Shown here: positions 21,209 through 51,379 of the stretch, piece by piece
Layout: the number at the start of each line of letters is the position of its first letter
Position numbering within the stretch: the first letter of the stretch is position 1
Assembly (NCBI RefSeq): GCF_036365525.1
Contig: NC_090393.1
Location: 54,700,488 to 54,764,487, forward strand
Reading direction: 5' to 3'
Source: Heterodontus francisci
Taxonomy: Eukaryota
Length of the DNA: 64,000 nucleotides
Program-made: the position numbers and the translations under genes
Notes under the pieces: model-generated
The model's input: the letters and a program-made list of their open reading frames with translations, nothing else
What the model was told of the DNA's origin: nothing
Databases searched by the model: none

Positions 21209-21556
21209 GCACAAACGCGGATGCTGTCCTGACTCAGCCAGGATCCATCTCCACCTCCCCGGGGAGCACCGTCAAGATCACCTGCACCATGTCCGGAGGC
21301 AACATCGGCAGCTACTACACGAGCTGGTACTGGCAGAAACCCAGCAGTGCCCCTGTATTGGTTTGGAGCTCGGACAGCGGTCAAGCTTCGGGGATTCCAG
21401 ATCGATTTACCGGGTCTGTGGAGTCATCGAGTAACCAGTTACTTTTAACCATCACCAATGTGCAGTCGGAGGACGCCCCCGATTATTACTGTGCTGCCAG
21501 GAGTAGCAGTGCAGTTGCATATATTTTCGGGAGAGGAACCAAGCTGAACCTGGACA
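21209..21556 (+). CDS. IGL: Ig light chain cluster 1, fused VJ exon
   Basis: Acceptor ttcaccag|; (S)TNADAVLTQPGSISTSPGSTVKITC...WYWQKP...GIPDRFTGS...EDAPDYYC-AARSSSAVAYI-FGRGTKLNLD; V runs into the J motif FGxG with no RSS; donor A|gtaagt at 21557. Confidence 0.97.
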
Positions 21557-21925
21557 GTAAGTAAATTATTTCTACTGAGCGTTAACATTTTCAGCGTTAA
21601 CATCGAAATATCAAAAATCACTTTAAAATCACTGGCTTGGTAGATTGGATGAGAGCAAAACAGGACTATTTCTCTTAGAATACAGAGCTTGTGAATCAGC
21701 GTCCGGTGACATTTAAAAGATAGGCATAACTGCGCCCAATTTTACGCAGGGTTTTCAGGTTGGAAGAGAGGACAGAGGCAATTTTTTTAAGATGATACCA
21801 GTGCTGCAAGGTTTTAGTTACAAGAGAACGAGAGTGAAGCTCGGTCTACTGGAAGTTTACGGGATCATCTGCTAGAAATGAGCATAGTTCTGAGCAAAAT
21901 GAAAACAGATATTTTCACTGATGTG

Positions 21926-22036
21926 TGACATCACACCTCAATATCAGAACCAATTGTCGAGGCTCGGCCTCTCATTTTAGTATTGAAAAAAGTAGTGTTT
22001 CAACCCTTTCTTCATTTCTTCACATTACATAAACCA
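21926..22036 (+). repeat. 111-bp direct repeat A in the J-C intron; copy at 51748-51858
   Basis: tgacatcacacctcaa...cacattacataaacca recurs at 23430-23540. Confidence 0.92.
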
Positions 22037-23429
22037 GTCGGTAGCCTGAGGACATCAATTCAATGTCCTTGGTAGAAGGACGAAGGGACTGGATAGGATA
22101 TTTTCTTTACCCAGTGGAGTGTTAGGACTGCAGTGTCCTATCTCAAAGAATGGGGCGAGCAGAATCAGACTATCGTTTAAAAAGAAAGTGGATAAAACTT
22201 TGACAAAGGAAAAACAAATGGATGGGAATAGGACTAAGTGGGCGCCTTTCAAAGGGTGCGATTGGCCTGTTTCTGGCGATGATTCTATGAATCCCACAGG
22301 GTCTTTGAGACCGGAATACCGCGGCCCTTTTCGGCTCAAAAGTCATAAACACAAACTCAAAACTTTCATTCTACTGGGAGTGGTACCGGAATTTAATCAT
22401 CATTCTTGGATTGAGACTGCGGGAGGATAGTGTGGCGACTTGCTGTAAATCTCTCTCATTCGTCTCCAAACTCAGTGAAAACCGCTCAGGACATGATTCT
22501 CAGTCCGACATTTCGCATGAATCCCCGCTGACTATAGTAATCACACTGATGAGCTAAGTTCAGCTGGTGATAACCATTCACACTGATCGATTTTCTGCAT
22601 TCCGCAATAACAAACACCAATAATTGACATGATGCCTATTTTCTTAACAAGTCAGGGGCTTGTGTAGCAATGTCTCGGAATCGGTATCAGATTCTTCCTG
22701 CTGCTCTTGTGCTTTCAATTGCGCTTTGCTGTCGGTTCTGTGGTTAGGGCGAGAGGAGTAAAATGGAAAATGCACATACTCTATCGCTATTTTGACTTGG
22801 TTATTCGGTGGCATCACAGCAAAATGGGCTAAAATGAGATATAAAACAGAACATGCGACAGAATATTTTCAATTATTCCTTTTCAAAACGATCGCTGCTA
22901 CTAACTTTCTCGTTCGTTATTTACTTGCTTACTCTCCTAAAGGTCCAGAGGCTTCTCTCCCCATTAGAGAGACAGTTGGTGATACATAGTTTGAGGATCA
23001 CCACTCCTCAAGTTTGGGACAAGCCTCCATGAGCTAACACAGCCGGTAAAGGGATTGAGCCCACGCTGTTGGGGTCTTTCTGTCTCATATTCTAGCCGTC
23101 CACCCAGCTGACGCTCAGTTCGCTGCAAAACTCTTGTATTTAGACAATAATATAAACTGATGGTAAAACCTACTCAATAATCCCACGAGATTTCAGATAT
23201 TTCAGTATCTGAATTTTCAGCTAAACTCTGGGTGAGGCCTGGAGATTATACAAACTCTGACAACAGGGGTTGGAGGCACTTGTCAGACGAATCGCAGTTT
23301 CAGTCTCCAAATTAATAACGTTAGGAAAGTGAGGCGAAGTGTCGGTTCCAAGGCGAAACTCTCTGAATGGCAATAGATTGTTAAACCGTCACCGTCACAT
23401 CGAGTGCTGGTGAGACGCGCCGATGTAGC

Positions 23430-23540
23430 TGACGTCACACCTCAACATCAGAACCAATTGTAGAGGCTCGGCCTCTCATTTTAGTATTGAAAAAAGTAGT
23501 GTTTCAACCTTTTCTTCATTTCTTCACATTACATAAACCA
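23430..23540 (+). repeat. 111-bp direct repeat B in the J-C intron; copy at 53253-53364
   Basis: About 4 mismatches to repeat A. Confidence 0.92.
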
Positions 23541-24631
23541 TTTTACTGAGGTTTGTCATTGGCAGCTGGTGCTTGTAATACATGGTGCGAAGGGTTATTT
23601 AAAAGATATGAGATTCTGAGAGTTCGGCTTTAATCTTCTTACACTTGGTAATATTTCGTTGTTGCCTTCATGGGAATATTTCGATTGAAGAATAAGAAAA
23701 AAAAAGAACGAGCTTGCATTGTTAGGCCTCCTTCCACGACCTCAGGACATCTGAGCGCACTTCATAGCTAATTTCGTGCTTTTTAAAGGACAGTCACCCT
23801 TTGTAATGTATGAAACTCGGCAGCTTATTTGCGCAAAGTCCCACAAACATCACAGGCCAGATAATCTGTTGTAACGATGTTAGTTGAGGGATGAATATAA
23901 ACCAGGTCAGGTTGGCTTTATTACTTGCAGATTGAGGTTATATTATTAGACAATATAGATATAATAGTTCACAATAACAGATGTTATTTAGAGGAAACAG
24001 TTTCCGTTTAGTGAAAACGTATGAATTGTGACACACTGACCCCAAAGAAGTCCCCAAACAGCGTAATTAGAATGTGATAGAACAGTCTTCTGAGGTTTTA
24101 GGCAAAAGAGTCGGACGAGCGGGAAACCTTGTGGCAGCGAGAAAGGAGCAAAGCGACAGAAATCCAAATATTAGTCCAAGATTCACTTCCGTCAAAGCAA
24201 GTGCAAATTCGAAATTATTTAATAGTTGGTTTAACAATTTGGCCTTAAACGTTTGGCCTTAAATATTGAACAATCTTTGCTGTCAGCATTGCCGTCAATA
24301 TTCTCTAATATGCCCTAATTCTGATTTATTGATTATTACGATTCTTTTTCATCTTTGTCTTATTGTCTGAGCGCATTATTTTGCTTAGATTCAAATTTCT
24401 CTTAAGAATTTGTATGCGTTTCTTGCCTGAAGGAAAAGTAGGAATCTTTTCTCAGGTTATATATTCCCCGGGACTGTTGCCCTAGCCATTGGACTCTAAC
24501 GGGATTCCGTTCTATTAAACTCATTATAGCTATTTAATGTAATTTTAAAAGTTTTCAAAAATGTCAAACATTGATTCCGACTTTTATGTGGATGAAAAAT
24601 GGATCTACTTAAATTTGTTTCTGATTTTCAG

Positions 24632-24954
24632 ATCCACGGGTCCCCTCGGTTTCGGTCCTTCCGCCTTCATCAGATCAAATCGCAGCAAAGAACACGGCGA
24701 CCCTGGTGTGTTTGGTGAGCGGTTTTAACCCGGGAGCTGTGGAGATTGAGTGGACTGTAGATGACAGTGTGAGAGGGAATGGTGTTGAGACCAGTCGGAT
24801 CCAGCAGGAGACGGACAACACGTTCAGTGTGAGCAGTTATCTGACTCTGCCAGCCTCAGAGTGGAACTCACACGAGCTTTTCTCCTGTGTGGTTAAACAC
24901 GAGACTCAGGCAAATCCGCTAAAAACAAGTATCTCGAGGTCCAGTTGTATCTGA
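24632..24954 (+). CDS. IGL: Ig light chain cluster 1, C exon
   Basis: Acceptor ttttcag|, phase 1; (N)PRVPSVSVLPPSSDQIAAKNTATLVCLVSGFNPG...W...FSVSSYLTL...FSCVVKHE...SRSSCI*; C1-set cysteines plus penultimate Cys for the heavy-light bond. Confidence 0.97.
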
Positions 24955-25167
24955 TTCAAAATCTTATGTATTGATTTGTTATTCCAGCAGCAAAGTTTCT
25001 TTACAAATATATTCCGCAAACGGCCATTACATGCTTGCTTTTAAGTGGAACATTTCAAATCAGAACAGTGGTGCAGTTTATCCGGTGGATTCCGCTGTCT
25101 GTTTTTTACAGTGTGTTCACCCTGAACTGATCAAAGTTTCAGTGTAACCTTACAAACATCACAGTTT

Positions 25168-25173
25168 AATAAA
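25168..25173 (+). terminator. PolyA signal, cluster 1
   Basis: AATAAA 214 bp after the stop, followed by GT/T-rich tgtgttgttattttt; conserved in copy 2. Confidence 0.8.
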
Positions 25174-25799
25174 ACGACTATTCCGCTATCTCATGTGTTG
25201 TTATTTTTCTGTGCCGTTGGGTCTGAAACAATTGTTAGCAACTTCCTACATGTGATTAAATAGCGGTTTTATTTTTGCAACATTCTGCACATTTTGTGTA
25301 AAGCCTTTGACATCAGTCAAAATAATCAGATTATGTACACGAAGACGTGGAAGTAATCTGGCAACATATTTTCAAAGATAGACCTGGCTGAATTTCGTTC
25401 GTGTCGGGATGGAGCTGAACCATTTGTCAGTGTTTCTGACACGAATTCAAAGCACTTGGTGCAAGTGTTTCTAAATCATCTGGTTACACAAATTCAGGGC
25501 AAACCCCGTGACCGCCTCTCTTTTGGAGACCCCGCACTTAACGCGCGGTGCAATTCCTGACACTGCATTCTTTTTTCAAAATTATCCGATGACTTTAATT
25601 GGTCAATAATGGTTAGATTGAATCAGGTTATTTTAGAAGCAAGTCATAACTAGAGATTCCTTGAGGCCTTTGACCGAAACCAGCTCATATAACAGTCGCG
25701 CTTTTTAAATTCAGCCTCACACAAATCACCAACTCGGTGCAGTATCCCTTTAGTATCAAGCCTTCTTTGTTCAGACTGATGTAGGTCTACGGTACATAA

Positions 25800-28721
25800 A
25801 TCGTTAAAAGTAGCATTATTAGTTGTTAAGGCCATAGCGAGTGAAAACAAAGTGCCAGCTAATTTCTATTGGAATAGAATACAACAGCAGGGGGGTTTAT
25901 GTTAGATTTATACAGAACTGTGCTCTGCATTGGACTCCATACTACAAATGATACTGAAGGACTTGAGAAAGTGCCGAACGTATCTGCAATGTTGTTACTC
26001 GAATTGGGATGATGCAACTATCAGGTAAATTAGCATGTTGGGCAATTTTCCCTTATTAAGAGAAGACTGGGTATAATTTATAGAGGGCTTTAAAATTATG
26101 AAGTGCGACAGGATAGACGTGCAGAAACTGTTTCCACGGTGCGTTGGACCAGAACAGAGAGGCGTAAATATCAGATCTCCACGCACCGATGACATCAATA
26201 GTTTACTTGAAGATACGGATTGGTGCTTGATTGGGAGGTAGGAGAGGGAGAATAAGCTTTCGTGTTTCATTCTCTGATTGGTTTCTACGTGACAAACGGA
26301 ATTCCGAAGGGATTAGTTCTTCCAGCACAGCTTTTCGCCATATATATTAATGAAGTCATACAGAGTTATATAAACAAGTTGCAGATCACACCAAATTCGG
26401 AGGTCGAGTAACTTTTGCCTCTCCTCAATGGAAAAAAAACCCTCTCAGAAATATTAAAGAACCAAGGGGCTAGCAAAAATGAGGAACTGAAATAAATTAG
26501 TATTCGTAAAAATGTAGTACTGGGGAATGATTAGGACTGAAAGTTGATAAATCCCCTGGAACTGATGTTTAACATGCCACACTGTTGAAAGTGTTGGCTG
26601 GAGAGACAGTGGATGCGTTGGTGATCATCTTCCAAAATTCTATAGATTCTGCAATTGTTCCTGCTGATTGAATGGTAGCAAATGTAACCCCACTAATTAA
26701 GAAAGGAGGGAGAGAGCAAACGGGAACCACAGACCTGTTTTCCTGACAGTAGGAGGGAAAATGCTAGAATCTAATATAAAGAATGTTATAACCGGACAGT
26801 TACAAAATAATGGTAGGATTGGGCAGGGTCAATAGGGATCTGTGAAAGAGAAATCATGTGACAAACCTATTAGTTTTTGAGGATAAGGTGGAGCCGTGGA
26901 TGTGGTGTGTTTGAATTTACAGAAAGCGTTTGATAAAGTCCCATGCAGGCTGGTCAACAAAATTAGAACACATGGGATTGGGGGTAATATACTGGCGTGG
27001 ATTGAGAATTGGTTAATGGACAGAAAACAGAGAGTAGGAAAAAACTGGTCATTCTCAGGTTAGCAGGCTTTGGATCACTGCTTGTGTACCAGCTAATCAC
27101 AATCTAAATCAATGATTTGGATGTGGGGGCTGAATGCAAGTTTGCTGATGACACAAAACCAGGTGGGCATGTGATTTGTGAGGAGGATGCAAAGAGTCTT
27201 CAAGGGATGCAAATTGCTTAAGTGAGTAGGCAAGGATATGGTTGATGGAATATAATGTGGGAAAATATGAGGTTAGCCACTTTGTTAGGAAAAAACAGAA
27301 ACGCAGAGTATTTCTTAAATGGTGAGAGATTGCGAAGTGTTGATGTCAAAAGGCAACTGAGTGTCTTTGTTCATAAGTCATTGAATGCTAACATGCAGGT
27401 GCAGCAAGCAATTAGGAAGCCAAATGGTATGTTAGCCTTTATTGCAAGAGAATTTGAGTTTCGGAGTAAAGATGTCTTGCTGCAATTGTGTCGAGTCCTG
27501 GTGAGACCGCACCTGGAGTATTGTGCGCAGTTTTGTTCATCTTACCAAAGGAGAGTGTCATAGAGGGAGTGCAATGAAGGTTCACCAGACTGATACCCGG
27601 GATGGCGGGATTGTCCTACGAGGAGAGATTGAGGAGACTGGGCCTATATTCTCTGGAGTTTAGAATAATGAGAGGCGATCTCATTGAAGCTTACAAAATT
27701 CTTACAGGGCTCGACCAAGTTGATGCAGGAAGGACGTTCCCCTGGCTGGCGGGGGGTGGGAGGGGAATGGTGGAGGGGGTCGGCGGTGGTCTACAACCAG
27801 GGGACACAGTCTCAGAATAAGTGGTAGGTCATTTAGGACAGAGCTAAGGAGGAATTTCTTCACTCAGAGAGTGGTAAATGTGTGGAATTCACTGGCCCAG
27901 AACTGCTGTGGAGGCTTGGTCATGAGTATCTTCTAGACAGTGATAGATTTCTAGACATTAACAATATCAAGGGATATGGGAATAGTGCAGCAAAATGGCA
28001 TTGTGGTCGAAGATCAGCCATGATCTAGAATAGTGGCAGACCTACTCTTGCTCCTATGTCCTTTGTTCCTAAGGTCGAAATTGAATGCTGACAAGCTCAG
28101 AAGGCTGAATTGACCGGTTGCTATGCCCTAGATTCTTCGCAGTTACAAATAGTGAGAAATTATTAAAATAACATGATCGAGTCACAGATTAATATCGACC
28201 TGATTTCAAATATGTTGCTAACACACAGCGTGAAAGCTGTTTTCAGTCAGCATACCTGTTTGTGCACATTGTTTCATGTCTACTGCTAAGATAAACCGCT
28301 AGTGCGTGCATTAGATATTATCATTCACGTAGCTGCCGCCCAACCCCCACCTGCAGTAGGATACCAAACAATTTGATAGGGCCTTGGTGAGCCCATACTT
28401 GTACTGTGAGTAGTTTTGATATCCTTACCTGAGGAGGGATATACTTGCCTTTGAGACATTGCAACACATGTTCAATAGACTGGTTCTTGGGATGAAGGGA
28501 ATTGAGCAAACTATGCTTATATTCCCTAGAGATGAGCAAAATGAGAGGTGAACTCAGTGAAACGCATATCATTTTAAGGGGCTTGACAGGATAGATATTG
28601 GGAGGTTTTTTCACCTGGCTGGTGAGTCTCGAACTAGGAGACACAGTCCCAAAATAAGAGGCAGCTATTTTGGACTGAGATGAAGAGCAATTTCTTCACT
28701 CAATCTTCAGAATTCTGTACC
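25800..28721 (+). mobile_element. Decayed CR1 fragments; counterpart at ~56340-59940
   Basis: FQNSIDS...ANVTPLIKKG, FDKVP, FADDTK, VLVRPHLEYC, LSYEERLRRLGLYSLE. Confidence 0.85.
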
Positions 28722-29800
28722 TGCAATAGCTCTCTTCTCACTCCCATGCATTACGTCTGGCGTACCCCAATGCTCTATCCTTGCCTCCCTCCTATTTCTC
28801 ATCTATATACTGCCTGTTGGGGACTTCATCTGGAAATACCATGTCAGGCGCCACATGAACTCTGATAACATCCAGGTCTGCGTCATCACAAGCTCTCATG
28901 TCCTCTCCACTGTTTCTACTTTGCTATATGGCTTGTCCGACATTCAGTACTAGATGAGCGATAATTTCCTCCAACTAAATATTGGAAAGAGGGAAGCCAT
29001 TGTCTTCCATCCTCATCACAAATTCCAGTCTATCGCCACCAACTCCTTACCTGTCCCTGGCAACTGTCTGAGGCTGAACAAAACTGTTCGTAACCTTGTT
29101 GTTGTATTTGAGCCTTCCAGGTGCTTATGAACACATAATCCATCACAAGACTGTCTAATCCCACCTCCATAACATTGCCTGACTTCACCCCTGCTTCAGA
29201 TCATCTGAAACTGAAACCCTTATCCATTCCTTGATTACCTCCAGACATGACAATTCCTATTCTCATCTGGTCAGCTTTCCATCTACCACACTACCTAAGC
29301 TTGACCTCATCCAAAATTCTGGTGCCCATATGCTACCTCGCACCAATTCCTTTTCACCAATCTCCCCTTTGCTCATTGGCCTACATTCAACAATGCCTTC
29401 ATTTTAAAACTTTCATTGTTGCTTACAAATTTCTCCATGGCCTTGTCTCTTGCTAGTTCTGTAACTTTCTGCAATCATACAACCCTCTGATATTTCTGAG
29501 CGCCTCCCATTCTGCCCACTTACATTGACACGATTTTAAATGCTCCATTATTGACAGCGGTGCCTTCAGGAGATGAGGTCCTAAGCTCTGGACTTCTCTC
29601 TCTCGCAGCACTGCCGCTCTTCCTCTATCTCTTCCTTGAAGGGGCACCTTAAAACCTATCTCTTTGATCAACAAACCCTGTTCTAACATCTTCTTTTGTG
29701 GTTTGCTATTAAATTTTGTTAGACTATGTTCATATAAAGCAGCTGGGATGATTCACTGCCTTAAAGTACTCGAGAAATGCAAGTGGTTGTTGTTTTAATA
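28722..29800 (+). mobile_element. Decayed L2-like LINE 3' part, present once in the window
   Basis: MSDNFLQLNIGKREAIVF, LIHSLITSR, FKTFIVAYKFLHGL; tail gaaatgcaagtggttgttg. Confidence 0.7.
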
Positions 29801-32800
29801 GTAAAGTCAAGTCAGTCATTGCGACTTCTGATACATTGCTTGTCTATCGATAAATCTAGTTTGCCGCTCATCCGTGCTTTGCTAAATCAATGAATAGGAG
29901 GAAAATATTATCCAAATGGGAGTTATGGCAGCTTGACCTTTGGGAAATCGATCTCTTGTGAAGCTCACTGGCTAAATATGTCACACAGTGAGCTGGATTT
30001 TACATTCAGTTTGAAGGCGGGTTCTTTGGCGTGGTTGGCCGGAGAATCAACGCAGATTCAGCTACCAAGGAACCTGATGCCTAATGCCAGATTCTGATTT
30101 CCTAGGAGGCGCCGAAATTCCATGGTGGCACTGCCGCCGCTCTGTGATGAGACTGTAATTTAAATATGTTAAATACAATTTTGCATTAATTATCATTAAA
30201 TTCACTGCAATCCTAACAGCTGTTTGCAATCTTCTGCATGACAGGTGGCACCCACGTGCTTTCACTTTCCTCTCTTGAAAAGCTGGCAACACCGAAGTGT
30301 GAATCCTTGGTGCTTGCAAAGGTTTGGTAAATTATGCGTTGTTCGCCTGTTGAACTTGTTTTAACTTCGGACATTACCACTAAGGTCAAGCTGCAAATAT
30401 AATTGACATAATAGCCGAACAGCTGTAATTAGTAGAAAATGATGATGATAAAACAGATGTAGGGCAATATGATGAACAACAAGGTAGGAGGTCCGAGAGT
30501 GATGCAGTGATATCGGCTAGGATTCAGTTAGAAACAAAAAAAACTTGAGGCAGAAAAAGTATTAAGAAATCTTGAATTGGAAAAAGAGGAAAGGGAAAAA
30601 GATAAAAACAATAGCATTAAGAAAACTTGAACTTCAGAGAGAGAGAGAGTGAAAGAGAAGACAGGCAATTTAAATTAAAAGAAATGGAACTATGACAAAA
30701 GAGTAGTCTTGAATCCAGGGAAAATTCAGGTCAGGAAGAGTCTGAGTTTAGATCAGGACTCAGTGAGAAGTTGTTCAGGTTTATATAGGCTCTTCCTAAG
30801 TTCGAGGAAAGGGATGTAGAGGCATTTTTCATATCTTTTGAAAAAATAGCTAAACAGATGAAATGACCGAAAGAAAGCTGGACATTGCTCATGCACGCAG
30901 GCTGGTAGGTAGAGCTCATGAAGCTTATGCCATGCTTTCTGAAGAGGCTTCTGCAGATTATTAAATGGCAAAAAAGGCTATTCTCACTGCGTATGGGTTA
31001 GTCCCTGAAGCTTACTGTCAGAAGTTTAGGAACTTACAGAGAATGACTAGGCAGACATATTAAGAATTTGAGAGGGTGAAGCAAATTAATTTTGACCGTT
31101 AGATATGGGCATTAAAGATAGAAACCACATATGAGGACCTTCGAGAATTGATTCTCTTAGAAGTGTTTAAAAACTCCATTCCTTCAGTAGTGAGATCTCA
31201 TGTAGATAACCTGAAACTTTTGAAAGCTAGGCAAGCAGCAGAGATTGCTGATGATTCTGATCTTGTGAATAAGCCAACCTATTTTGTCCGTCACCACCAT
31301 AAACCCGAGAAGGATAGAAAGTGGAAGAGTAAAAGGAAGGCAAGTAGCCGGGCACAAGAAGGAACAGCTGAGAATGCCCCAGCATCACCTTCTCAGGTCA
31401 GAAAGGAACGTGCTGGGGTAGAAGTGAGGTTCACAACTCAAGATGTTATCATTGCAACAACAGGGGTCATCTTCATTCAGAGAGCTGGAAATTGCGAGGT
31501 AAACGCATAGGACTTGTTGGGGTAAGCAAAGTTAGTGCAGAGGAAAGACTCCCTGACTGAGAGTACAGAAGACCAGGCTATAGCTTTAACGACAGCTGTG
31601 AATGTGAAGCCAGAACTAAAACTAAGAGGATTGTAGAGGTTAAGAATAAAATAGCTGAGAGTTGTAATGATTTTTTGACAAAGGGGGAGTAACTCTGTAT
31701 CCTGTAAGTGAGGCAGGAAATCCTCAGGGATACAGGAGCGACCCAAACACTCTTGCTGGAGAAAGATATGAAGTTTTCACCAGACAGCATCTTGAATGCT
31801 GAGGTTTTAGTAAATGCAATTGGCGGGGTGTGTATACCCATACCTTTGCATAGAGAGTGACTTAATAACTGGGATAGTAACAGTAGGTGTTGTTCAGAGT
31901 TTACTAGTAAAGGGAATTGATCGACTCCTAGGAAATGATTTGGCTGGATCAAAAATATCAGTTTTTCCTATAGTTACAGAGGAACCATGTGAAGTTAAGG
32001 AAATGGAGCAATTACAGGAGCACATTCCAGGAATATTTCCTGCGTTACGAGCAATGGCTAAACAGGATCCATTGTTGGAGTTAAAAGGGACACCACAAAT
32101 AGATAATCAGGCATCTGAAACCTTATTTGGGGATTTAGATAATCCAAATCAGATGTTTAACAGATTGTCTATCATTGCAGCACAGCAAGCTGATCCAGAG
32201 ATCTACCAAATAGTATAGACAGCTCTGTCAGAAGCCGAGGTGAAAGGAGTTCTGGAAGGCTATTATATGGCAAATTGGGTTTTGTGGAGGAAATGGAGAC
32301 CGCCTCACAGACATGCTGACAAAGACTGGACAGTTGTTGAACAGATAATGTACCACCTAATGTACCAATCGCCAAGGATTATTAAGGTTAGCACACGACA
32401 TTCCCTTTTCAGGACATAGGGGAATTCAGAAGAACAAATCATACATAAGCAAACATTATTACTGGCCAGGTCTTACAAAGGTGTCAGACAATTTTGTAGA
32501 AAATGCCACACCTCTCAAACGGTGGGAAAACGACACCTACAATTGAAAGTGTTCGCAAGTTGTTAATTGTTGAAATCCGTCATGGAAGAAGGAAAGCACC
32601 ACCTGCTGCTGGAGTTAGACTATGGACTGTTCTACTGTGGAAGAACCTTTTTTTTTGCATCGGACGGCTGGGAGGACTTCAAGCAACATTGGACTGTAAA
32701 TTTGCAAGGACTCTATTTTTTTCTAGTTTAAATGTTGTTTCTATTTTCATAATGTTTAAGAATTTAATTCTTCTTATTAAAGAGTTAATTTAAAAGCACC

Positions 32801-35800: not shown

Positions 35801-36514
35801 CTTGTCTAGTAGGGCCATCCACATACTGATTCAGAAAACTATCCTGGACACACTTAACAAATTGTTCCCCATCTGATCCCTTTGCACTAAGGCAGTCCCA
35901 GTCAATATTAGGGAAGTTAAAATCACCTATGAATACAACCCTATAATCCCTATACCTATCTGTGATTTCCCTACATATATGCTCCTCCACTTCCCTCTGA
36001 CTATTGGGGGGCCTATAGTATAATCCCATCAAAGTGCTCACCCCTTTCTTATTTCTAAGTTCTACCCATGTGGCCTCGCTGGGCATTACTCCCGGGATAT
36101 CCTCTCTAAGTACTGCCGTGATGTCCTCCTGAATCAATAGTGCAATTCACCCTCCTCTCTTACCTCTAGCTCTGTCACACCGGAAGGATCAGTACTCCAG
36201 AACATTGAGCTGCCAGTCCTGCCCATCCCTCAAACACGTTTCCATAACTGCTATAATATCACCATCCCATGTGCTGATCCATGCTCTGAGTTCATCTGCC
36301 TTACCTGTAAGGCATTAAAATAAATGGAGTTTAGCCGATCAGACTTTCCACGCTCCCTGTATTGCCCCTGCCACGCCTGCCTACTGGACTTGCTTGCTTT
36401 AACCTCAACATTTGCCTCAACTAACTCATCGGAGAGACTACTACTTGTCCCGAGCCCCTGCAAGACTAGTTTAAACCCTCCCAAGTAATACTAGCAAACC
36501 TCCCCGCAAGGGAA

Positions 36515-36605
36515 GGTTAACTCTGATATTAAACATTGTGGTTACACTGATATTAAACACTGTGGTTACTCTGATATTAAACATTGTGGTTACTCTGATA
36601 TTAAA
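36515..36605 (+). repeat. Same 24-bp minisatellite, ~4 units
   Basis: Inter-copy offset drops by 96 bp (4 units) here. Confidence 0.97.
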
Positions 36606-42600: not shown

Positions 42601-45600
42601 CTTGTCGAATTTTCGGCTGAGAGGGAAAGTACAGTTTTCTCTCTTCAGTACGCTTCACTGGAAAATCTCTCAACACTGACTGGTGTCAGCTGGTTTCTGC
42701 CAGTTCCACACACAGTCAAAGTGGAAGCATCATACCATGTGAACTCTCTCTCCTGCTGTTGCCCAGGGTAAAATAATGCACCTGTGGCACACTGTGTCCC
42801 CAGACCTTTCTCTCCCTTAAAGGTACACTGTTTTTAACAGAGTCTTAAAAGTCCACACACTGTTTTTAATCCAAGGAGAAAAATAGTTACACGTCTGTGA
42901 CAACTGGAATTCAGCAGTTTAGTCCGTGTTTGGACCAAGGCTGTAATTAATTAGTTCTAGAGCCAATTGAGTGCCAGTGAGCAGGTTATTGCCAAGTACA
43001 TACCACTTGACAGCACTGCTGACAACACCTTCCAGCAGCTTGCTGATGATTGAGAATAGACTGATAGGGTGGTAATTAACCAGGCTGATTTGCCCAGCGT
43101 TTGGTGGACAGGACATACCTGGGCAATTGGTAGATGCCAGTGTTGTGTCTGGACTGGAACAGCTTGGCTGGAGGTGCAACTAGTTCTGTGGTGCAAGCCT
43201 TAAGTAATACAGCAGAGATGTTGTTACGGCCCATAGCCATTGTGGTATCCAGTGCCTTTAGCCATTTCTTGGTAGCAAATGGAATGAATCAAAATTGGCT
43301 GAAGTCTGCCATCTTTTTATTTTATTCATTTCATGAGGTGTGTCACTGGCAAGGGCAGCATTTTTTGCCCATCCCTAATTGCCCTTGAGAAAGTGGTGGC
43401 AAGCTGCCTTCTTGAACTGCTGCAGTCCATCTGGTGGGGATACTCACACAGTGCTATTAGGGATGGAGTTCCAGGATTTTGGTTCATTGACAGTGAAGGA
43501 ACAGCGATATATTTCCAAGTTAGGAAGGAGTGCGGCTTAGAGGGATGCTTACAGGATGGTGATGTTCCCACATGTCTGCTGCCCTTGTACTTCTAGGTGG
43601 AAGAGGTCGCATGTTTGGAAGGTTCTATCGATGGAGGCATGGTGAGTTGCTGCAGTGCATTTAGTAAATGGTACATCGTGCTGCCACTGTGCGCTGGCGG
43701 TTGAGGGAGTGAATGTTTAAGATGGTGGATGGGGTGTAAATCAAGCGTGCTGCTTTTTCCTGGATGCTGTCATGCTTCCTGAGTATCGTTGGAACCGCAC
43801 TCATCCACGCAAGTGAAGAGTATCCATCACACTCCTGAATTGTGTTTCGTAGATGGTGGACAATCTTTGGGGAGTCAGGAGGTGGGTTACTCACCACAGA
43901 AGTCCGAGCTTCTGACCTACTCTTGCAGCCACAGTATTTATGTGGCTGCTCCAGTTCCGTTTCAGGTCAATTGTAACACCCTGCTTATAGTAGGGGATTC
44001 TGTGATGACAATGCCATTCAATGTTCAGGGGAGATCATTGGATTTTGTCTTGTTGGAAATTATCAATGCCTGGCACTTCTGTGGTGCAGATGTTACTTAC
44101 CACTTATCAGCCAAAGCCTGAATGTTGTCCAGGTCTTGCTGCATAAGGACATGGACTGCATCACTATCTCTGATGGTAGTGGCCTCAGGAGGAGGCTGAG
44201 ATGGATCAGCACTTCAGGCTGAAGGTTGTTGCAGTGCTTCAGCCCTGTCTTTGGCACTCTCACGCTGGGTTCTTCCCCCTTTGAGTATTGGAATAGACAT
44301 GAAGAATCCTCCTCCCATTAGTTGTCAACTTTGTTTCCTACCATTCGTGACTGGATTGGGCAGGACTACGGATTTTGATCTGATCCATTGATTGTGGGGT
44401 TGCTTAATTCTGTCGATAGCATACTGCTTCCGTTGTTTAGCATGCATGTAGTCCTGTGTTTCAGTTTCACCAGTCATACAGCTCACTTTTAAGTTTGCCT
44501 GGCGTTACTCATGGCATGCTGTCCACCACTGCTAACTGAACCAGGATTTAGAGCATGGGAACCCAACCCGAACCCGACCAGAACCGATGACGTGTCAGCT
44601 TTGGGTCGGGTCTCTCTTCCTGGTCCGGCATTGGGGTTCAGGTCGGGTCGGGCTGGGTGGGTCACAGTGCTGCCTTTTGCTTAAGGAGGGAAAAGCTTCA
44701 AAATTTGAACGGCCAGGACGTCAAGGCAAGAAATGTGCATCCGGGCTCGGCACTAGTCTGCAGTGCATGATTCCATTCAAGGTAGAGCACAACCTCTTTG
44801 ATATAATCAACTTCATTCCAGTAGTCGTGCCAGGCGAGTTGGGTCGCGTCGGGCGCATGAACAAATCAAAGGACTCAGGATGGGTCGGATTCGGGGTCGG
44901 ATGTGGTTCTCTCGTTCCAGGGTTGGGTTTCAATTGCATACCTGAGCAGGCCTTTACCAGGGTTAGCCCCGTCGCGTGATGGTGATAGTAGAGTGTGGCC
45001 ATGAGATTACAGATTGTGCTTGAATATAATTCTGCTGCTTTTGATGTCTCACAGTGCTTCAAGGATGTCCCATTTTCAGCTTCGAGATCTGTTCTGCTCT
45101 AACCCATTTTGTATGGTGCTACTGCCATGGAACATGATGGAGGGTTTCATCAGTGTGAAGGCAGGACTTTGTCTTCACAAGGGCTGTGCAGTGGTGACTC
45201 CTAACAACACTGTCATAGACAGATGCATCTGCAACAGAGAGGCTGACGAGGACTGGCTCAGGTCGGTTTTCCAACATGATGGGTCTCTCACTACCTGCTG
45301 CAGACCCAGTATGGCAGCTTCGTCAGTAGTGGTGCTACTGAGCCACTTTTGGTGCTGGACATTTAAGTCCCTCACCCAGATTATATTCTGAGCACTTGCT
45401 ACTATCAGTGCTTCTTCAAGTGGTGTTCAACATAGAGGAGGACTTATTTATCAGCCGAGGGAGGGCCGTAGGTGATAATCAGCCATAAGAATTTATGGAG
45501 CCAAAATTATTTTAAGGATTCCCAGGTTCAGTCCCTCCCAACCATATACCACTGCGCCTTCACCTCTGGTGAGTCTGGACAGAGTTTTATGTTGGGCGGG

Positions 45601-48600
45601 AGGTCCCGCCCACCGGCCAAACCTTCGGGGATGAGCCCACCTCTGCCGGGCCTGGAGACCCACGCCAGGCTTTTACACTCCCCAGCCTATTACTTGCCGC
45701 TGCTACCCCTCATAAAATTGTAGTGCCTATTTAAGACAGAGATGAGGAGAAAGGTTTTCTCTCAGAGGGTCGTAAGTCTTTGGAACTCTCATCGTGCAAA
45801 GTCAGTGGAAGAGGTACTTAGAATCTTGATAAACAAGAGGGTGAAAGGTTATTGGCGGTAGGCAGGAATGGGGTGTTGAGGTTACATTCAGATCAGCCAT
45901 GATCTTGTTGAATGGCGGAGGAGGCACGAGGGGCCGGGTGGTCTACTCCAGCACTTAATTCATATGTTCGTATGTTCGTATATCATCCCTGTGTCATATG
46001 TTACAGCACCAGCAGGTGGCAATGTTGCACTACATTTATTTGGTGCACAAATGTCAATGGCATCTCAGACATTTCTTATGAGTAAAAATAAGAACATTTT
46101 GTGATTAATTATATCACATTTTATCAAAATATTACAACTTAAAGATATTTGTCTCTCAATTAGCCACAATTATTTACATCAAACCTTTGATACTTCCGAA
46201 ATTGTCTTTAACATTTCCCGTTGCTTGGTTTCGGCTTGCAAAATGCGAACAATATAAGTGACTCCTTGCAACTCAGAGCAAGCACAGAGCGATCGCGGAT
46301 GTCATCAATCTGTGCGGACGTTTGCCAGCTTGCCAGTATGAATGCGCGGTTGCCTTGTCAGCAAACTCAGCCCATCTAAACCTGTGGTTCTCAAACAGAG
46401 CTCCCCAGACCCGTGGGGTCCGCAGTGACCTTCTGTGCTGTCCGCGTGCAGGACAACCTTATAGTTGGACGGCTGTCCAGGGCTCCGTAACCAGGAGTAT
46501 GCAAGTGAACGGCGATCGCAGCCGTGCTCTGCTCCATCGTGTTCCTCCAGTGTTTTTTTCCGTGATCTGCTTCCCCCGTGATGCGATTCCCGCCATTGTA
46601 CTGCTCTCTCCGGGTTGCTGCCAAGAATAGACAGACTATGCAGTGAGAAGCAGGCACTCCCATCACACTGTTATCTATAAGTAAATACCGGTCTTCTCAA
46701 AACCGTTCTTAAAACAATCTTTACATGCAGAACTTTCATATTTTGAGCTTGATATAGCATTATAATTGGGCCGGGGTGGGGGGCATGATTACTAATCTAT
46801 TAATCCGTTAAAAGGAGTCCTTTAGTGAAAAAGATTTGAGAACCACTGGACTAGAGAAACTGGGGCTTCTCTCAGAGTGGAGCACGTTAAAGAGAGATTT
46901 GATCGAGATGTTCTTCAAGCAACAGAAAAGCAAATAATGCGAATGCTACAAATCTGAAATAGAAACAGAAAATGCTGGAAATACTCAGCAGGTCTGCCAG
47001 CATCTGTGGAGACAGGAACAGAGTTAACTTTTCATGTCGATGACCCTTCATGAGAACTGGGAAACGTTGTAAATGTAAAAGATTTATAGTAGTATAAATA
47101 TAGGAGGATGGAAATAGAACAAAATGGAACGTCTGTGATAGGGTGAAAGTTGGGAGACATTGAGTGACAAAGGAGTTGGTGGGGCAGAGTGAAAGGGAGT
47201 AGTAATGGGACAAGTAAAGAAAAAAAATGTCTCCAGAGGAGGTGTGAATGGCAGCATAATGAACAGCTACAATCCAAAAGCAAAAACAAGAGAAAAAGTG
47301 TGAAAAACAAGACAGCAGTCGAAACATGCAAAGGAAAGGTATTAAAATGGGGGCAGAGATTAGAGTCTGGAATTGTTGAACTCAGTATTGAGTCTAGAAG
47401 GCTGTAGAGTGACTAATCAAGAGATGAGCTTCATTGGAACACTGCAGCAGGCCGAGAACAGAGATGCCAGCGTGAGAGCATGATGGAGAATTAAAGCTGC
47501 AGTCCACTGGAAGCCTGGGGTCATGCTTGTGGCTGACCAGAGGTATTCCACTAATTGTTCACCCAATCTGCATTTATTCTCCTTAATGTAGAGCAGATTG
47601 CATTGTGAGCAGCATAAACGGTGGATAGGTTACTAGGCTGTTTCCCCTCGAAGGAGTGTTTGAGGCCTAGGACAGTGAGGCGAGATGAGGCAAGGGGACA
47701 GTTCCTGTATCTCCTGTGCTTGCATGGAAGGGGACAGGGTGTTGGGTGTGAGAGAGGAGTGGAGCAGGGTGTCACGGAGGGAATGTTCCCTCCAGAATGC
47801 TGAATGGGGAGGGGAGCGAAAATGTGTTTGATGGTGGCATCAAGTTGAATGGGGCAGAAATAGTGGAGGATGATCCATTGTATGTGGAAGCTGGTGGGGT
47901 AGAAGGTGAGGACAAGGGGAAACCTATTGTGGCTCTGGGAGGGATGGAAAGGTTTGACAGCCGAAGTGTGCGATATGGGTCAGACATGGTTGAGGGCCCT
48001 GTCAGCCACGTTGGGGGGCGGAGAGTTGCGGGGGATAGAATCCTTGGTTGAGGAAGAAGGGAGACATATCCGAAGTACTGGTGTGGAAGGTTGCATCATC
48101 AGAATAGAGATGGAGAAACTGGGAGAATGGAATGTAGTCCATACAGAAAGTAATTTGTGACTGTGTAGTTGAGGCAGCTGAGCCAATCAGTGGGCGTATT
48201 ATGACTATTTGTTTATAGCCCATCACTATAAATGAAGACAAAGAGGCACAGGAAGGGAAGCGGAGTTGGAGATTGCTCATGAGAAGCTGAGAGAAGGGCC
48301 GAAATTGGAATCAAAGTTGAAAAACATTTCCAATTCAGAGTGAGAGCAGGGAATGACACTGATACATTCATCAATTTACTGGAAATAGAGTTGAGGGAAG
48401 GGGAACGAGGAATCTTCCACATTTTCCACAAAAAGGCGGGCATAACTGGAACCGAGGTGGGTAGCCATCGCAACACCTTTTAACTGGAGGAAGTGAGATG
48501 AGTGAAAGAAGAATTTATTCAATGTGAGAACAAGTTCCAACAGGCAGAAGTGGATGGTAGTGGATGGAAACTGGTTGCACCTCCATTCAAAGAAGATGTG

Positions 48601-50692
48601 GAGAGCCCTCAAACCATCCTGGTGGGGGATGGAGGTGTGGAGAGATTGGACGTCCATGGTGATGAGAAGACGGCTATGGTCGGGAAACTGGAAACAGTTG
48701 AAGTGACAGTGGGCATCAGAAGAGTCACGGATGTAGGTAGGAAAGACTGGACAAGGGGAGAACAAAATAGATTCGAGAGGAAGAAATCAGTTCAGTAGGG
48801 CAGGAACAGGTTGAAGCAATAAGTCTCTTTGGGTCGTCCTGTGTGTGGATCTTGGGAAGCAGGTGGACGTGGGCTGTAAGGCGTTGGGGAACTATGAGGT
48901 TCTAAGCTGTGGAGGGATGATCTCCAGTCGTGGAAATAATGGTTTGGTGTTTGGTACTGTGGTTATTCTTCAGGGAGAGGTAGGAGGAAGTGTCAGAGAG
49001 TTGATGTTCAGCATCTGATAGGTAAAGATCAGTTTGTCAGTCAACAACAGCACCATTCTTGTCAGCAGCTTTGATATGATGTTAGGGTTGGACCTGGGAG
49101 AACAGAATGCAGTCAGTTCAGGGGGAGATAGGTGATAGTGAGTGTGGGAGCAGAGAAATTGAGACGGTCAATGTCACATTGCATTTCTCAATGTAAAGAT
49201 CAAGAGAGGTAAGAGGCAGGGGAGGAGGGAGGTGGGGGGGGGGGGGGGGTGGTGCAAGGTGGAGGGAGAATATTGGAAATGGGTAAACTGGTTTGATGTG
49301 TGAAGGGAGGACTCCTGGCCAAAGAAGTCGGCGCAGAGGCAAAGACAATGGAAAAAGAGCTCAACATGGTGCCGAGATCAAAATTCTTTGAGATAGGCCG
49401 TAAGGGAATAAAGCTGAATCCTTTACGAAGAACATATTGTCCAGGGTCAAGGTGGGGAATGTGGGAAGTTATTGTGAATACACGGCAAGAGGTGAGATTA
49501 GAAGAAGGGATGTAGTCAGAAGGAAGTGAAGGGGAGAAAGATCTGGAAGGGTATTGGTACCCATGAGCTGTCTGAGCTTGCGATCCTCAACAACTGACAT
49601 GAAGATAAAAAGTTCTTGAAGGAATTTGATAGAGTAAATAAGCAGCATGTCTTTCCAGTGGCAGAGTTTCGACAAACAGAGGTCACAGATTTAAGGTAAT
49701 TTGGGAAAAGAACAGAAGGGCAAGGAGGGAAACAAAGACACGCCAGTTGTTTTGATCTGGAATACATCAGCTGAAATGTTGGTGGGAGAAGATTTAATAA
49801 TAACTTTCGAAAGGGAATTTGATAATCACTTGAAGGTGGGAAATATAGAGGGTTCTGGAGAAAGACGAGGGCATTGGATCTAATTTGATAGCTGCTTCAC
49901 AGAGCCTACATAGGCGCTATGGGCCGATTGGCCTCCTTTGGTGCTGTTTCATTCCATGAATCTATGTACTATCTGAGACACTATCTGCAACCACGACGGC
50001 CAGTGCTCTCAGTGTACTGATTGAATCGTTATTTCTTGATCTCTCTCTGTGCCTTTCAGTTGGACAATGAGAATGGAATTTCGCACAACAGTGACATCGC
50101 ACAGATGATTTCACTTTGCCGTTTTTCATAACTATCACAAGTCTAATGAACAACTGTTATATTTGACTCATTTACCCTTCATTTTTCAATTCATTGACAT
50201 GACATTCTAAACCTCACCGTTTCCTGTGACACAAATAACTTGCCCGGATCCATTAATAAAACATCTTGCGGAAAGCACCATTTCCTGGTCCACATTATTC
50301 TCACAAAGTTTAACTCACCAAGACTTCCCAGGAAGTGCACTATTGTCACCTCATTGCAGGGCAAGATGAAAATAAAACATTTCGATGTGTTTGTTAAACC
50401 TTCATTCATTTCCATGATCGATCGATCGATCGATCTATCTATCCCTGATGTCAATAGGGACAGTGCCCAATTTCTTTACTTCCTTGCTGCAAACAAATCA
50501 AATCTCAACTCATACTTTGCTTATCCAATGCGCTCTTCCCGAGCTCCATAGAGCTATTAAAGTATTTACTATGCTCAATCATTCTCCAGTTGTATCCGAT
50601 CTCATTGACGTTTTGTTTCTCTTTTTCTAAAATGGCTGACATGCGCGTAATTCAAATATCAGTCAACACAGGGCATGGGATCCCGTGACCTG

Positions 50693-50761
50693 ATTTACAT
50701 GAATGGAAATTTGCATGTAAATTTAATATTCAATGACGTTGCGAAGGTTGAAACTTTTTAA
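50693..50761 (+). promoter_or_regulatory. Ig light-chain promoter, cluster 2
   Basis: ATTTGCAT at 50709-50716 with the same flanking motifs as cluster 1. Confidence 0.85.
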
Positions 50762-50839
50762 GGAGAGGTTTAGAAAGAGCCCAGAACCACATTCGTGTCA
50801 GGAACTATTCTCCATCTGACCCTCACTAGAACCTTCACC

Positions 50840-50888
50840 ATGACTGAATGGGTTCAGGTTCTTGCCGCACTGATGCTGTGTCTCCACA
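50840..50888 (+). CDS. IGL: Ig light chain cluster 2, leader exon
   Basis: MTEWVQVLAALMLCLH, donor gtaagt at 50889; one silent change vs cluster 1. Confidence 0.93.
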
Positions 50889-51031
50889 GTAAGTACAGGC
50901 GTTAACCTTCATTATCGCTGCTGTTTGCATTGCTCGGAATTTTTTTTTGTGCTTGTGTTTAACAGACCTGAATTAGCAACAATATTCACAATTGCAGAGT
51001 TTGACTGATCAATAACTTGTTATTTCACCAG

Positions 51032-51379
51032 GCACAAACGCGGATGCTGTCCTGACTCAGCCAGGATCCATCTCCACCTCCCCGGGGAGCACCGTCAAGA
51101 TCACCTGCACCATGTCCGGAGGCAGCATCGGCAGCTACTACACGAGCTGGTACTGGCAGAAACCCAGCAGTGCCCCTGTATTGGTTTGGAGCCAGTTGGG
51201 CGGTAAAGCTTCGGGGATTCCAGATCGATTTACCGGGTCTGTGGAGTCATCGAGTAACAAGTTGCTTTTAACCATCACCAATGTGCAGTCGGAGGACGCC
51301 GCCGATTATTACTGTGCTGCCCTGCTTGGCAGTACAGCTGCATTTATTTTCGGGAGAGGAACCATGCTGAACCTGGACA
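51032..51379 (+). CDS. IGL: Ig light chain cluster 2, fused VJ exon
   Basis: 348 nt, same length as cluster 1; ...EDAADYYC-AALLGSTAAFI-FGRGTMLNLD; intact AG/GT splice sites; no RSS. Confidence 0.97.

What the first reader, a model, noticed from the sequence alone, without database searches (positions are those of the whole stretch)
21209..51379. Two pre-joined VJ paralogs diverge almost only in the CDRs and almost only by replacement
Seen: the VJ exons (21209-21556 vs 51032-51379) differ at 20/348 nt: 1 in CDR1 (N/S), 7 in CDR2 (SDSGQ/QLGGK), 8 in CDR3 (RSSSAVAY/LLGSTAAF), 3 in FR3 and 1 in J. Only one change (TTA/TTG) is silent, and FR1 and FR2 are identical. The C exons differ at 5/323 nt, 4 of them silent, and adjacent non-coding DNA differs by only ~1-2%. 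Both CDR3s are 11 aa, consistent with a single ancestral join. Inference: these genes cannot gain junctional diversity, so the repertoire appears to be built by cluster duplication plus strong diversification of the binding loops, i.e. an inherited, evolving antibody light-chain array.
Basis: partly seen in the sequence, partly recalled or inferred. Interest (0 to 1): 0.85.

Follow-up and report, generated by a model that had tools for sequence, protein, structure and literature searches.

The report
Horn shark pre-joined lambda light-chain genes
These are two neighbouring, already annotated horn shark antibody lambda light-chain genes whose V and J parts are fused in the inherited DNA, a textbook feature of sharks. 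They differ mainly in the antigen-binding loops, and at least the CDR3 difference was swapped in from other gene copies rather than newly mutated.

Summary
The VJ exons differ at 20 of 348 nt (1 CDR1, 7 CDR2, 3 FR3, 8 CDR3, 1 J), with only one silent change. The C exons differ at 5 of 323 nt, four of them silent.

The window is Heterodontus francisci. Exon translations match RefSeq XP_067911421.1 (copy A) and XP_067911423.1 (copy B), both named "immunoglobulin lambda-1 light chain-like". These are type II/NS3 lambda clusters, reported as germline-joined in every cartilaginous fish studied. A CDR-focused excess of replacement changes among joined genes was published for skate in 1995.

RNA contigs from the same animal show very high exon depth and the predicted splices.

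The inference of duplication followed by fast CDR mutation is only partly supported:
- B's CDR3 is identical in the left-hand neighbour gene (XP_067911420.1), and A's CDR3 recurs in XP_067911702.1. Those two genes share framework and CDR2 states that A and B lack, so this is a recombination or gene-conversion mosaic.
- Divergence along the 30.5 kb repeat runs from 0 to about 11%.
- C domains group by species, whereas V lineages are shared across species.

I therefore read the array as concerted evolution with CDR diversity retained and shuffled. Only CDR2 looks newly diverged. Other first-stage notes of this scan flagged neighbouring clusters of the same array. The biology is known, so interest is low.

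The parts
1..28721 (+). Tandem repeat unit A of the lambda cluster array (period about 30.5 kb). It matches unit B with identity that changes along its length.
   Evidence: Self-BLAST and segment alignments. 1-6104 matches 30502-36605 with 0.29% mismatch. 6111-16059 matches 36515-46471 with 0.69%. 16644-25392 matches 46460-55236 with 2.87%. 25436-28721 matches 55945-59755 with 9.4% plus about 1 kb of indels.
30502..59755 (+). Tandem repeat unit B.
20888..20895 (+). Octamer ATTTGCAT of the cluster A promoter, starting 131 nt upstream of the ATG. Cluster B has the same motif at 50709-50716.
   Evidence: The window holds only 3 matches, and two of them sit at the equivalent position of the two clusters.
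21019..21067 (+). Leader exon of cluster A (ATG at 21019, phase-1 end, GT donor at 21068). It has one silent difference from B, at 21057.
   Evidence: Sequence. The translation is the N-terminus of P0121. RNA joints run from 21067-21070 to 21206-21214.
21209..21556 (+). Germline-joined VJ exon of cluster A. V and J form one open frame with no heptamer or nonamer. CDR1 is 21286-21324, CDR2 21370-21390, CDR3 21493-21525, and the J part runs from about 21520 to 21556.
   Evidence: Pfam V-set, E = 9e-15; no recombination signal sequences; alignment to a human lambda-6 chain.
21557..24631 (+). J-C intron of cluster A (GT..AG, 3075 nt). It carries high-copy repeat fragments at about 22854-23125 and 23806-23941.
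   Evidence: RNA joint 21556 to 24632 in 20 contigs. The depth table.
24140..24631 (+). Hyperdivergent stretch of the intron directly 5' of the C exon. It differs by 12% between A and B, against 1.9% in the rest of the intron.
   Evidence: DNA contigs of run X1 hold both versions: record 7 with 1 difference from A, and record 8 with 16 differences, which is the number separating B from A over that interval.
24632..24954 (+). C exon of cluster A (C1-set domain, stop TGA at 24952-24954). An AATAAA signal lies at 25168.
   Evidence: (C1-set, E = 1e-25).
50840..50888 (+). Leader exon of cluster B.
51032..51379 (+). Germline-joined VJ exon of cluster B.
   Evidence: the translation is contained in P0120, XP_067911423.1.
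54477..54799 (+). C exon of cluster B.

Best explanation
The two genes are adjacent members of the horn shark (Heterodontus francisci) immunoglobulin lambda array (type II, also called NS3). Each copy lies in an about 30.5 kb tandem unit. Each has an octamer promoter, a leader exon, one VJ exon fused in the germline, a 3.1 kb intron and one C exon.

The genes are transcribed and spliced as ordinary light chains. With no V-J joint to make, each gene contributes one fixed binding-site sequence. Repertoire breadth must then come from the number of clusters plus somatic hypermutation. That last step is inferred; it fits the 2-3-fold enrichment of WRCY/RGYW hotspots in the CDRs.

Over evolutionary time the array undergoes concerted evolution. 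Unequal crossing-over and gene conversion keep homogenising flanks, introns, frameworks and C exons between clusters, at different times for different segments. The CDR-coding stretches stay different, and are exchanged as short cassettes.

Between A and B:
- The CDR3 difference is a swap between two older CDR3 versions that also exist in other clusters.
- The CDR2 difference consists of residues unique to each copy. It is either new change kept by diversifying selection or a cassette from a donor not among the annotated genes.
- Purifying selection explains the silent-only pattern in C.
For: Identity:
- Pfam V-set and C1-set domains.
- The best hits are sandbar shark lambda chains at 73-75% identity.
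- Exon translations are contained exactly in RefSeq proteins P0121 and P0120 of H. francisci.
- There is no heptamer or nonamer, and splice sites are canonical.
- An octamer sits at the same place in both clusters.

Expression:
- Run X5 (listed as probable RNA), from the same sample, has exon word depth of 1e5-1e6 against about 10-20 in the introns.
- The joint 21556 to 24632 (GT..AG) appears in 20 contigs, and leader-VJ joints lie within 2-3 nt of the predicted sites.
- A second organism's run (X9, also listed as probable RNA) covers the exons too.

Mosaic:
- In alignment A1, columns 22, 33 and 101 group {A,B} against {420,702}.
- Columns 115, 116, 117, 119 and 122 (CDR3) group {A,702} against {B,420}. 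No column supports the third split.
- By my own count, not a tool result, perfect spatial separation of 3 and 5 such sites has a chance of 2/56 = 0.036.

Uneven age of the unit:
- Mismatch is 0.29%, 0.69%, 2.87% and 9.4% in four successive segments (chi-square 940, p about 1e-203).
- A 12% intron patch abuts the C exon.

Concerted evolution:
- In the V-domain tree, one H. francisci clade is rejected (p-AU 1.6e-5, lnL difference 169). P0147 and 704 group with other species' V lineages (support 100/100 and 100/99).
- In the C-domain tree, holding all H. francisci C domains together costs 0 lnL. A against P0147 is 43% identical in V but 90% in C.

Selection pattern: CDR 16/93 against a background of 1.73% (p = 7e-12), V against C replacement/silent Fisher p = 0.002-0.005, C pN/pS 0.08.

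Hotspots: 16-20 per 93 nt in the CDRs against 19-21 per 252 nt in FR.

Literature: lambda genes are joined in all species studied (PMC5192425, PMC4279169). CDR>FR and replacement>neutral were reported among joined skate genes (PMC2192082, abstract).
Against: - The mosaic is shown at protein level only. DNA of the other clusters could not be fetched, so tract ends, donor direction and silent-site identity of the shared CDR3s are unknown.
- The alternative order of events needs the same process but a different history: a two-cluster block duplication followed by homogenisation of everything except CDR3.
- The C-domain test against the V-type grouping is not formally significant (p-AU 0.099), and the tested groups were named after a first tree had been seen.
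- Contigs cannot phase or quantify A- against B-specific transcripts.
- No independent individual covered the VJ exon (run X10).
- Somatic hypermutation of these two genes was not observed here.
Confidence: 0.75

Rival explanations
1. One recent cluster duplication was followed by rapid replacement substitutions, driven by positive selection on new point mutations, in CDR1-3 of both copies. No exchange with other clusters is involved.
For: FR1 and FR2 are identical, and immediate non-coding flanks differ by 1.7-1.9% while the CDRs differ by 17%. Nineteen of 20 VJ changes are replacements. CDR2 residues are unique to each copy among the annotated paralogs: A has S71, D72 and Q76, and B has Q71, L72 and G74.
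Against: The CDR3 versions of A and B recur in other clusters in a pattern incompatible with the framework states. Divergence along the unit ranges from 0 to about 11%, so there is no single duplication date. Equally dense difference patches occur in non-coding DNA (24140-24631, 19417, 18394-18893). The pairwise codon test is not significant (CDR p = 0.06).
Confidence: 0.15
2. The contiguous multi-base differences are footprints of an AID-type tandem mutation process acting in germ cells, or of somatically mutated sequence returned to the germline.
For: Ten of the 20 VJ differences lie in runs of 2-4 adjacent bases. That resembles the contiguous substitutions described for shark somatic hypermutation; this comparison rests on my own knowledge of Lee et al. 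2002, which I did not read here. The CDRs are rich in WRCY/RGYW motifs.
Against: Runs of adjacent differences are just as frequent in the non-coding 12% intron patch: 7 runs among 58 differences, one of them 5 bases long. They are expected wherever 7 of 13 or 8 of 23 bases differ. Both introns are retained, so the genes are not processed copies. The CDR3 versions are shared with other germline clusters.
Confidence: 0.04
3. The two copies are an assembly artefact: two haplotypes of one locus placed in tandem.
For: The first 16 kb of the units are 99.1-99.7% identical. All DNA runs that hold the stretch come from the same sample.
Against: There are no gaps (no N) in the window. The 3' 3 kb of the units differ by 9-11% with about 1 kb of indels, and a 12% intron patch exists; this seems far beyond what alleles of one locus would show (my judgement, not tested). 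The units differ by insertions of an about 580-bp element and by minisatellite copy number. Further distinct clusters follow at the same spacing on both sides. RefSeq annotates both as separate genes.
Confidence: 0.03

Closest known systems
Sandbar shark (Carcharhinus plumbeus) lambda light-chain genes; genomic clone of Hohman et al. 1993 (cited from my own knowledge). Database entries P0001, P0002, P0047, P0052.
   Same: Same isotype (type II, NS3, lambda) and same L / VJ-fused / C cluster layout. Identity is 73-82% across the V region. Diversity arises without rearrangement.
   Different: A different species. Here two neighbouring clusters are seen in full genomic context: 30.5 kb tandem units, flanks and introns.
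[quoted passage not shown] 1995, PMC2192082).
   Same: All genes are joined in the germline. Differences between clusters fall preferentially in the CDRs, replacements exceed neutral changes, and the joined genes are expressed.
   Different: A different isotype (sigma-2, type I) and order of fish. At least 89 clusters were characterised by clone and PCR sequencing, without array-scale context.
Nurse shark NS4 germline-joined genes (Lee et al. 2000, PMC2193156) and nurse shark NS3 lambda (six loci, all joined; PMC5192425).
   Same: VJ fusion attributed to RAG activity in germ cells. The octamer and regulatory motifs are retained, and the joined genes are expressed.
   Different: NS4 is a mixed family of split and joined genes in which the joints could be reconstructed. 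Here no split relative is available, and the joint is old and shared.
Chicken V pseudogene pools used for somatic gene conversion (as discussed in PMC2193156).
   Same: V-region diversity is moved as short sequence cassettes between tandem family members.
   Different: In chicken the exchange is somatic, in B cells, from pseudogenes into one functional gene. Here the exchange is inferred in the germline, over evolutionary time, between functional genes.
Human lambda-6 light chains (IGLV6-57 type), for example PDB 8vur_L and 9oka_E.
   Same: The best solved-structure matches (E = 5e-64 for the tandem chain; about 112 bits per domain). They share the SSSN insertion in the DE loop of FR3.
   Different: The human gene is a split V segment that rearranges to J.

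Membership tests
Cartilaginous-fish Ig lambda (type II / NS3) germline-joined light-chain cluster | Cluster layout: leader exon, one V(J) exon and one C exon within a few kb | tested here: met
   Cluster A: 21019-21067, 21209-21556, 24632-24954. Cluster B: 50840-50888, 51032-51379, 54477-54799.
Cartilaginous-fish Ig lambda (type II / NS3) germline-joined light-chain cluster | V and J fused in frame, with no intervening sequence or recombination signal sequences | tested here: met
   One open frame from FR1 through FGRGTKLNLD to the GT donor. No CACAGTG/CACTGTG heptamer or nonamer in the exon or the next 60 nt.
Cartilaginous-fish Ig lambda (type II / NS3) germline-joined light-chain cluster | V-set plus C1-set domains, with closest relatives among elasmobranch lambda chains | tested here: met
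   Pfam V-set E = 9e-15 and C1-set E = 1e-25. Sandbar shark lambda at 73-75% identity. Exact match to H. francisci RefSeq lambda-like proteins.
Cartilaginous-fish Ig lambda (type II / NS3) germline-joined light-chain cluster | The joined state is present in germline (non-lymphoid) DNA | tested here: inconclusive
   The joined form is the assembly consensus at both clusters and in seven further RefSeq genes. DNA contigs of run X1 hold the stretch. The tissue of origin is not on record, and the one run from another individual (X10) did not cover the VJ exon. Published work reports lambda as germline-joined in all species studied (PMC5192425).
Cartilaginous-fish Ig lambda (type II / NS3) germline-joined light-chain cluster | Transcribed and spliced L-VJ-C | tested here: met
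   Run X5 (listed as probable RNA): exon depth 1e5-1e6 against about 10-20 in the introns. Joint 21556 to 24632 in 20 contigs, plus leader-VJ joints. Contigs do not separate A and B from their paralogs with certainty.
Positively selected CDRs (dN/dS above 1) | Replacement rate in the CDRs significantly above the silent rate | tested here: inconclusive
   Pairwise Nei-Gojobori CDR pN/pS is 6.4, one-sided p = 0.06. Against the local non-coding rate the excess is strong (p = 7e-12), but part of it is imported CDR3 sequence. Family site models were not run because DNA of the other clusters was unavailable.
Concerted evolution / inter-cluster gene conversion | Incompatible site patterns with a spatial breakpoint among paralogs | tested here: met
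   Three sites support {A,B}|{420,702}, five CDR3 sites support {A,702}|{B,420}, and none supports the third split. The breakpoint lies between alignment columns 101 and 115. Protein level only.
Concerted evolution / inter-cluster gene conversion | Heterogeneous divergence along duplicated units | tested here: met
   Mismatch of 0.29%, 0.69%, 2.87% and 9.4% in successive segments (chi-square 940). Twelve per cent in the patch at 24140-24631.
Concerted evolution / inter-cluster gene conversion | Homogenised parts group by species while diversified parts keep trans-species lineages | tested here: met
   V domain: one H. francisci clade is rejected (p-AU 1.6e-5). C domain: holding H. francisci together costs 0 lnL, while the V-type grouping costs 31 lnL (p-AU 0.099, not formally significant). 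The groups were named after a first tree had been seen.
Concerted evolution / inter-cluster gene conversion | An identified donor tract at DNA level, with defined ends | not testable with these tools
No other collection on hand holds this genome.

The most novel reading that the evidence does not exclude
Short-tract germline gene conversion moves CDR cassettes (CDR3 here, perhaps CDR2) between functional, pre-joined lambda clusters, while longer events homogenise everything else. The array would then generate new CDR2-CDR3 combinations over evolutionary time without RAG. That would be a germline counterpart of chicken somatic gene conversion, visible at assembly scale for the first time in the horn shark.
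Probability: 0.45. Interest if true: 0.45.

Novelty: already known. Interest (0 to 1): 0.25.

Why it matters
Germline-joined shark light chains are the classic case of antibody genes that cannot gain junctional diversity. How such arrays keep their binding loops diverse bears on how antigen-receptor repertoires evolved.

This window adds no new kind of gene. Both genes are in RefSeq, and both the isotype's joined state and CDR-focused replacement among joined genes were published in the 1990s.

What the chromosome-scale context does offer is a clean view of homogenisation and CDR retention or shuffling acting side by side. That could be turned into a proper family-wide recombination and selection study.

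Tried and rejected
DNA of the other seven to eight clusters could not be fetched, so no codon site models or DNA-level recombination tests were run.
- The spliced gene model was searched exon by exon, by reference. The joined step was left out. Identity to the RefSeq proteins was shown by finding each exon translation inside database proteins.
- Read laying, run X1: these DNA contigs appear to have merged A/B variants, and one contig carries a mix of A and B letters. They show that both versions are present, for example in the intron patch, but not copy number.
- Read laying, run X10: raw reads from another individual (targeted capture) covered only repeat fragments and a little of the C exon. 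The test in an independent animal therefore failed for lack of coverage, not by a negative result.
- Read laying, probable-RNA runs: the contigs cannot phase CDR2 with CDR3 or show somatic mutation.
- The pairwise Nei-Gojobori test alone is not significant.
- The "contiguous substitution" signature is not specific to the CDRs. The non-coding 12% patch shows the same runs.
- Pfam gave no match for four long ORFs in the spacer.
- No paper in the held library describes the horn shark lambda array at genome scale.
- A word search of earlier findings returned nothing.
- Haplotype-duplication artefact was considered and judged unlikely (see rival explanations).
Full report
**What is there**

The window holds two tandem units of about 30.5 kb. 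Each carries one light-chain gene on the + strand.

| Part | Cluster A | Cluster B |
|---|---|---|
| Octamer ATTTGCAT | 20888-20895 | 50709-50716 |
| Leader exon | 21019-21067 | 50840-50888 |
| VJ exon | 21209-21556 | 51032-51379 |
| C exon | 24632-24954 | 54477-54799 |

In A the octamer starts 131 nt before the ATG. The leader intron is 141 nt and GT-AG. The J-C intron is 3075 nt and GT-AG. The stop is TGA, and an AATAAA signal lies 214 nt downstream.

The VJ exon is one open frame from FR1 through the FGRGTKLNLD motif. It contains no heptamer or nonamer. Pfam finds a V-set domain (E = 9e-15) and a C1-set domain (E = 1e-25).

**Check of the observation**

- The VJ exons differ at 20 of 348 nt: 1 in CDR1, 7 in CDR2, 3 in FR3, 8 in CDR3 and 1 in J.
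- That gives 14 amino-acid replacements and one silent change. FR1 and FR2 are identical.
- The C exons differ at 5 of 323 nt, four silent and one F/Y.
- The CDR limits agree with an alignment to a human lambda-6 chain of known structure.

Against chance:
- The local non-coding rate is 1.73% outside dense patches. On that rate the exon (p = 4e-6) and the CDRs (16/93, p = 7e-12) are far in excess, while FR and C fit the background.
- The replacement/silent contrast between V and C is significant (Fisher p = 0.002-0.005).
- The pairwise Nei-Gojobori test alone is not significant: CDR pN/pS 6.4 (p = 0.06), VJ 3.2 (p = 0.11), FR 0.93, C 0.08.

**Identity**

The VJ exon's best database relatives are sandbar shark lambda chains at 73-75% identity.

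A search with one of these returned full-length "immunoglobulin lambda-1 light chain-like" proteins from many elasmobranch genomes. The closest were from Heterodontus francisci.

The exon translations of A and B are contained exactly in XP_067911421.1 (P0121) and XP_067911423.1 (P0120). Both lie on an 83.7 Mb contig that also carries XP_067911420, 424, 425, 701, 702, 704 and a more distant lambda gene, P0147.

The spliced model itself was never joined for a search. Exons were searched by reference and matched as substrings of database proteins.

Reviews state that lambda (type II, NS3) genes are germline-joined in all cartilaginous fishes studied (PMC5192425, PMC4279169). Anderson et al. 1995 (PMC2192082, abstract) had already reported, for at least 89 joined skate clusters, that differences fall preferentially in CDRs and that replacements exceed neutral changes. 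Lee et al. 2000 (PMC2193156) attribute joining to RAG activity in germ cells.

The class, the organisation and the CDR-focused replacement pattern are therefore established knowledge. Other first-stage notes of this scan flagged the neighbouring clusters of the same array.

**Expression**

Contigs of run X5, listed as probable RNA and taken from the same sample, give exon word depths of 1e5-1e6 against about 10-20 in the introns.
- The joint 21556 to 24632 (GT..AG) appears in 20 contigs.
- Leader-VJ joints lie within 2-3 nt of the predicted sites.
- A second organism's run (X9, also listed as probable RNA) covers the exons as well.

At the CDR2 positions a minority of the contigs carries the full B pattern. 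Others keep A's letters, and most carry letters of other paralogs. The family is therefore highly expressed, but contigs cannot quantify A or B.

DNA contigs of run X1 hold both versions of the divergent intron stretch. One contig has 1 difference from A. Another has 16 differences, which equals the A-B count over that interval.

The only run from another individual (X10) did not cover the VJ exon.

**Why the duplication-then-mutation reading is incomplete**

1. The unit has no single age. Mismatch is 0.29% (1-6104), 0.69% (6111-16059), 2.87% (16644-25392) and 9.4% with about 1 kb of indels (25436-28721); chi-square is 940. Several kilobases show no difference at all. Within the gene region there are non-coding patches as dense as the CDRs, above all 24140-24631, which differs by 12% and sits directly 5' of the C exon.

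2. The CDR3 difference is not new. Among the H. francisci paralogs (alignment A1):
   - B's CDR3 is identical in XP_067911420, its left-hand neighbour cluster.
   - A's CDR3 differs by one residue from that of XP_067911702.
   - Those two genes share FR1, CDR2 and FR3 states that A and B lack.
   - For this quartet, three sites support {A,B}|{420,702}, five CDR3 sites support {A,702}|{B,420}, and none supports the third split. The breakpoint lies between FR3 and CDR3.
   - This needs recombination or gene conversion, whichever order of events is assumed.

3. Over longer times the same process is visible in the trees.
   - V-domain trees keep trans-species lineages. A single H. francisci clade is rejected (p-AU 1.6e-5). 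P0147 and 704 group with other species at support 100/100 and 100/99.
   - C domains group by species. Holding H. francisci together costs 0 lnL. The V-type grouping costs 31 lnL (p-AU 0.099), which is not formally significant.
   - A against P0147 is 43% identical in V and 90% in C.
   - The tested groups were named after a first tree had been seen.

CDR2 residues are unique to each copy among annotated paralogs: A has S71, D72 and Q76, and B has Q71, L72 and G74. A also carries unique replacements in the DE loop (Q94), FR3 (P108), CDR3 (V120) and C (F217). B has M129 in J.

These may be new changes kept by selection, or imports from unannotated donors.

The runs of adjacent differences are not a specific hypermutation footprint. 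The non-coding 12% patch has seven such runs, one of them 5 bases long.

WRCY/RGYW hotspots are 2-3 times denser in the CDRs than in FR. This fits somatic hypermutation as the somatic diversifier, but hypermutation of these genes was not observed here.

**Verdict**

The genes are known, annotated, expressed, germline-joined horn shark lambda clusters.

The mechanism I consider most likely is concerted evolution of the array, with CDR diversity retained and exchanged as cassettes under diversifying selection. It is not a single duplication followed by a burst of point replacements.

The limits are clear. Codon site models were not run, and no independent individual was informative.

Noticed in passing
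window 6014-6200 and 36515-36605: A 24-bp minisatellite has 7.8 copies in unit A and 3.8 copies in unit B. It lies exactly at the boundary between the 99.7% and 99.1% identical segments.
   Followed up: partly
window 16051-16633 (+), 55333-55919 (-), 58958-59609 (+): An about 580-bp dispersed repeat is present in unit A but absent at the matching place of unit B. An inverted copy is inserted in unit B just 3' of the gene, where unit A has none. The copies are 90-97% alike, which suggests a recently mobile element. Shorter pieces lie at 9818-9917 and 40223-40322.
   Followed up: no
window 24140-24631 (and 54000-54476): A 490-nt stretch of the J-C intron directly 5' of the C exon differs by 12% between the copies, with several 6-8 nt indels. 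The rest of the intron differs by 1.9%. The first 41 nt of the C exon carry two silent changes, as if the tract ran on into the exon.
   Followed up: partly
window 21920-22036 and 23422-23540 (and 51742-51858, 53245-53364): A direct repeat of about 119 nt (95% alike) lies inside the J-C intron of both clusters.
   Followed up: no
window 22854-23125 and 23806-23941: Two intron stretches have word depths in the thousands in DNA contigs. Raw reads of another individual pile up there too, and most of those reads run on into sequence unlike the window beyond the matching part. These are high-copy interspersed repeat fragments.
   Followed up: no
proteins P0147, P0084 against P0121 (same 83.7 Mb contig, outside the window): Horn shark lambda genes with very different V domains (43% and 67% identical to A) carry nearly the same C domain (90% and 94%). 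The same holds within catshark and white shark. C exons appear to be homogenised within species.
   Followed up: partly
window 21478 (P108) and 24881 (F217) in cluster A: Cluster A alone has Pro in the otherwise invariant EDAADYYC motif and Phe in the YSC motif of the C domain. This could mean relaxed constraint on A. Expression specific to A could not be resolved.
   Followed up: no
window 27255-27820: Two adjacent ORFs in the 88-90% identical spacer gave no Pfam match.
   Followed up: partly
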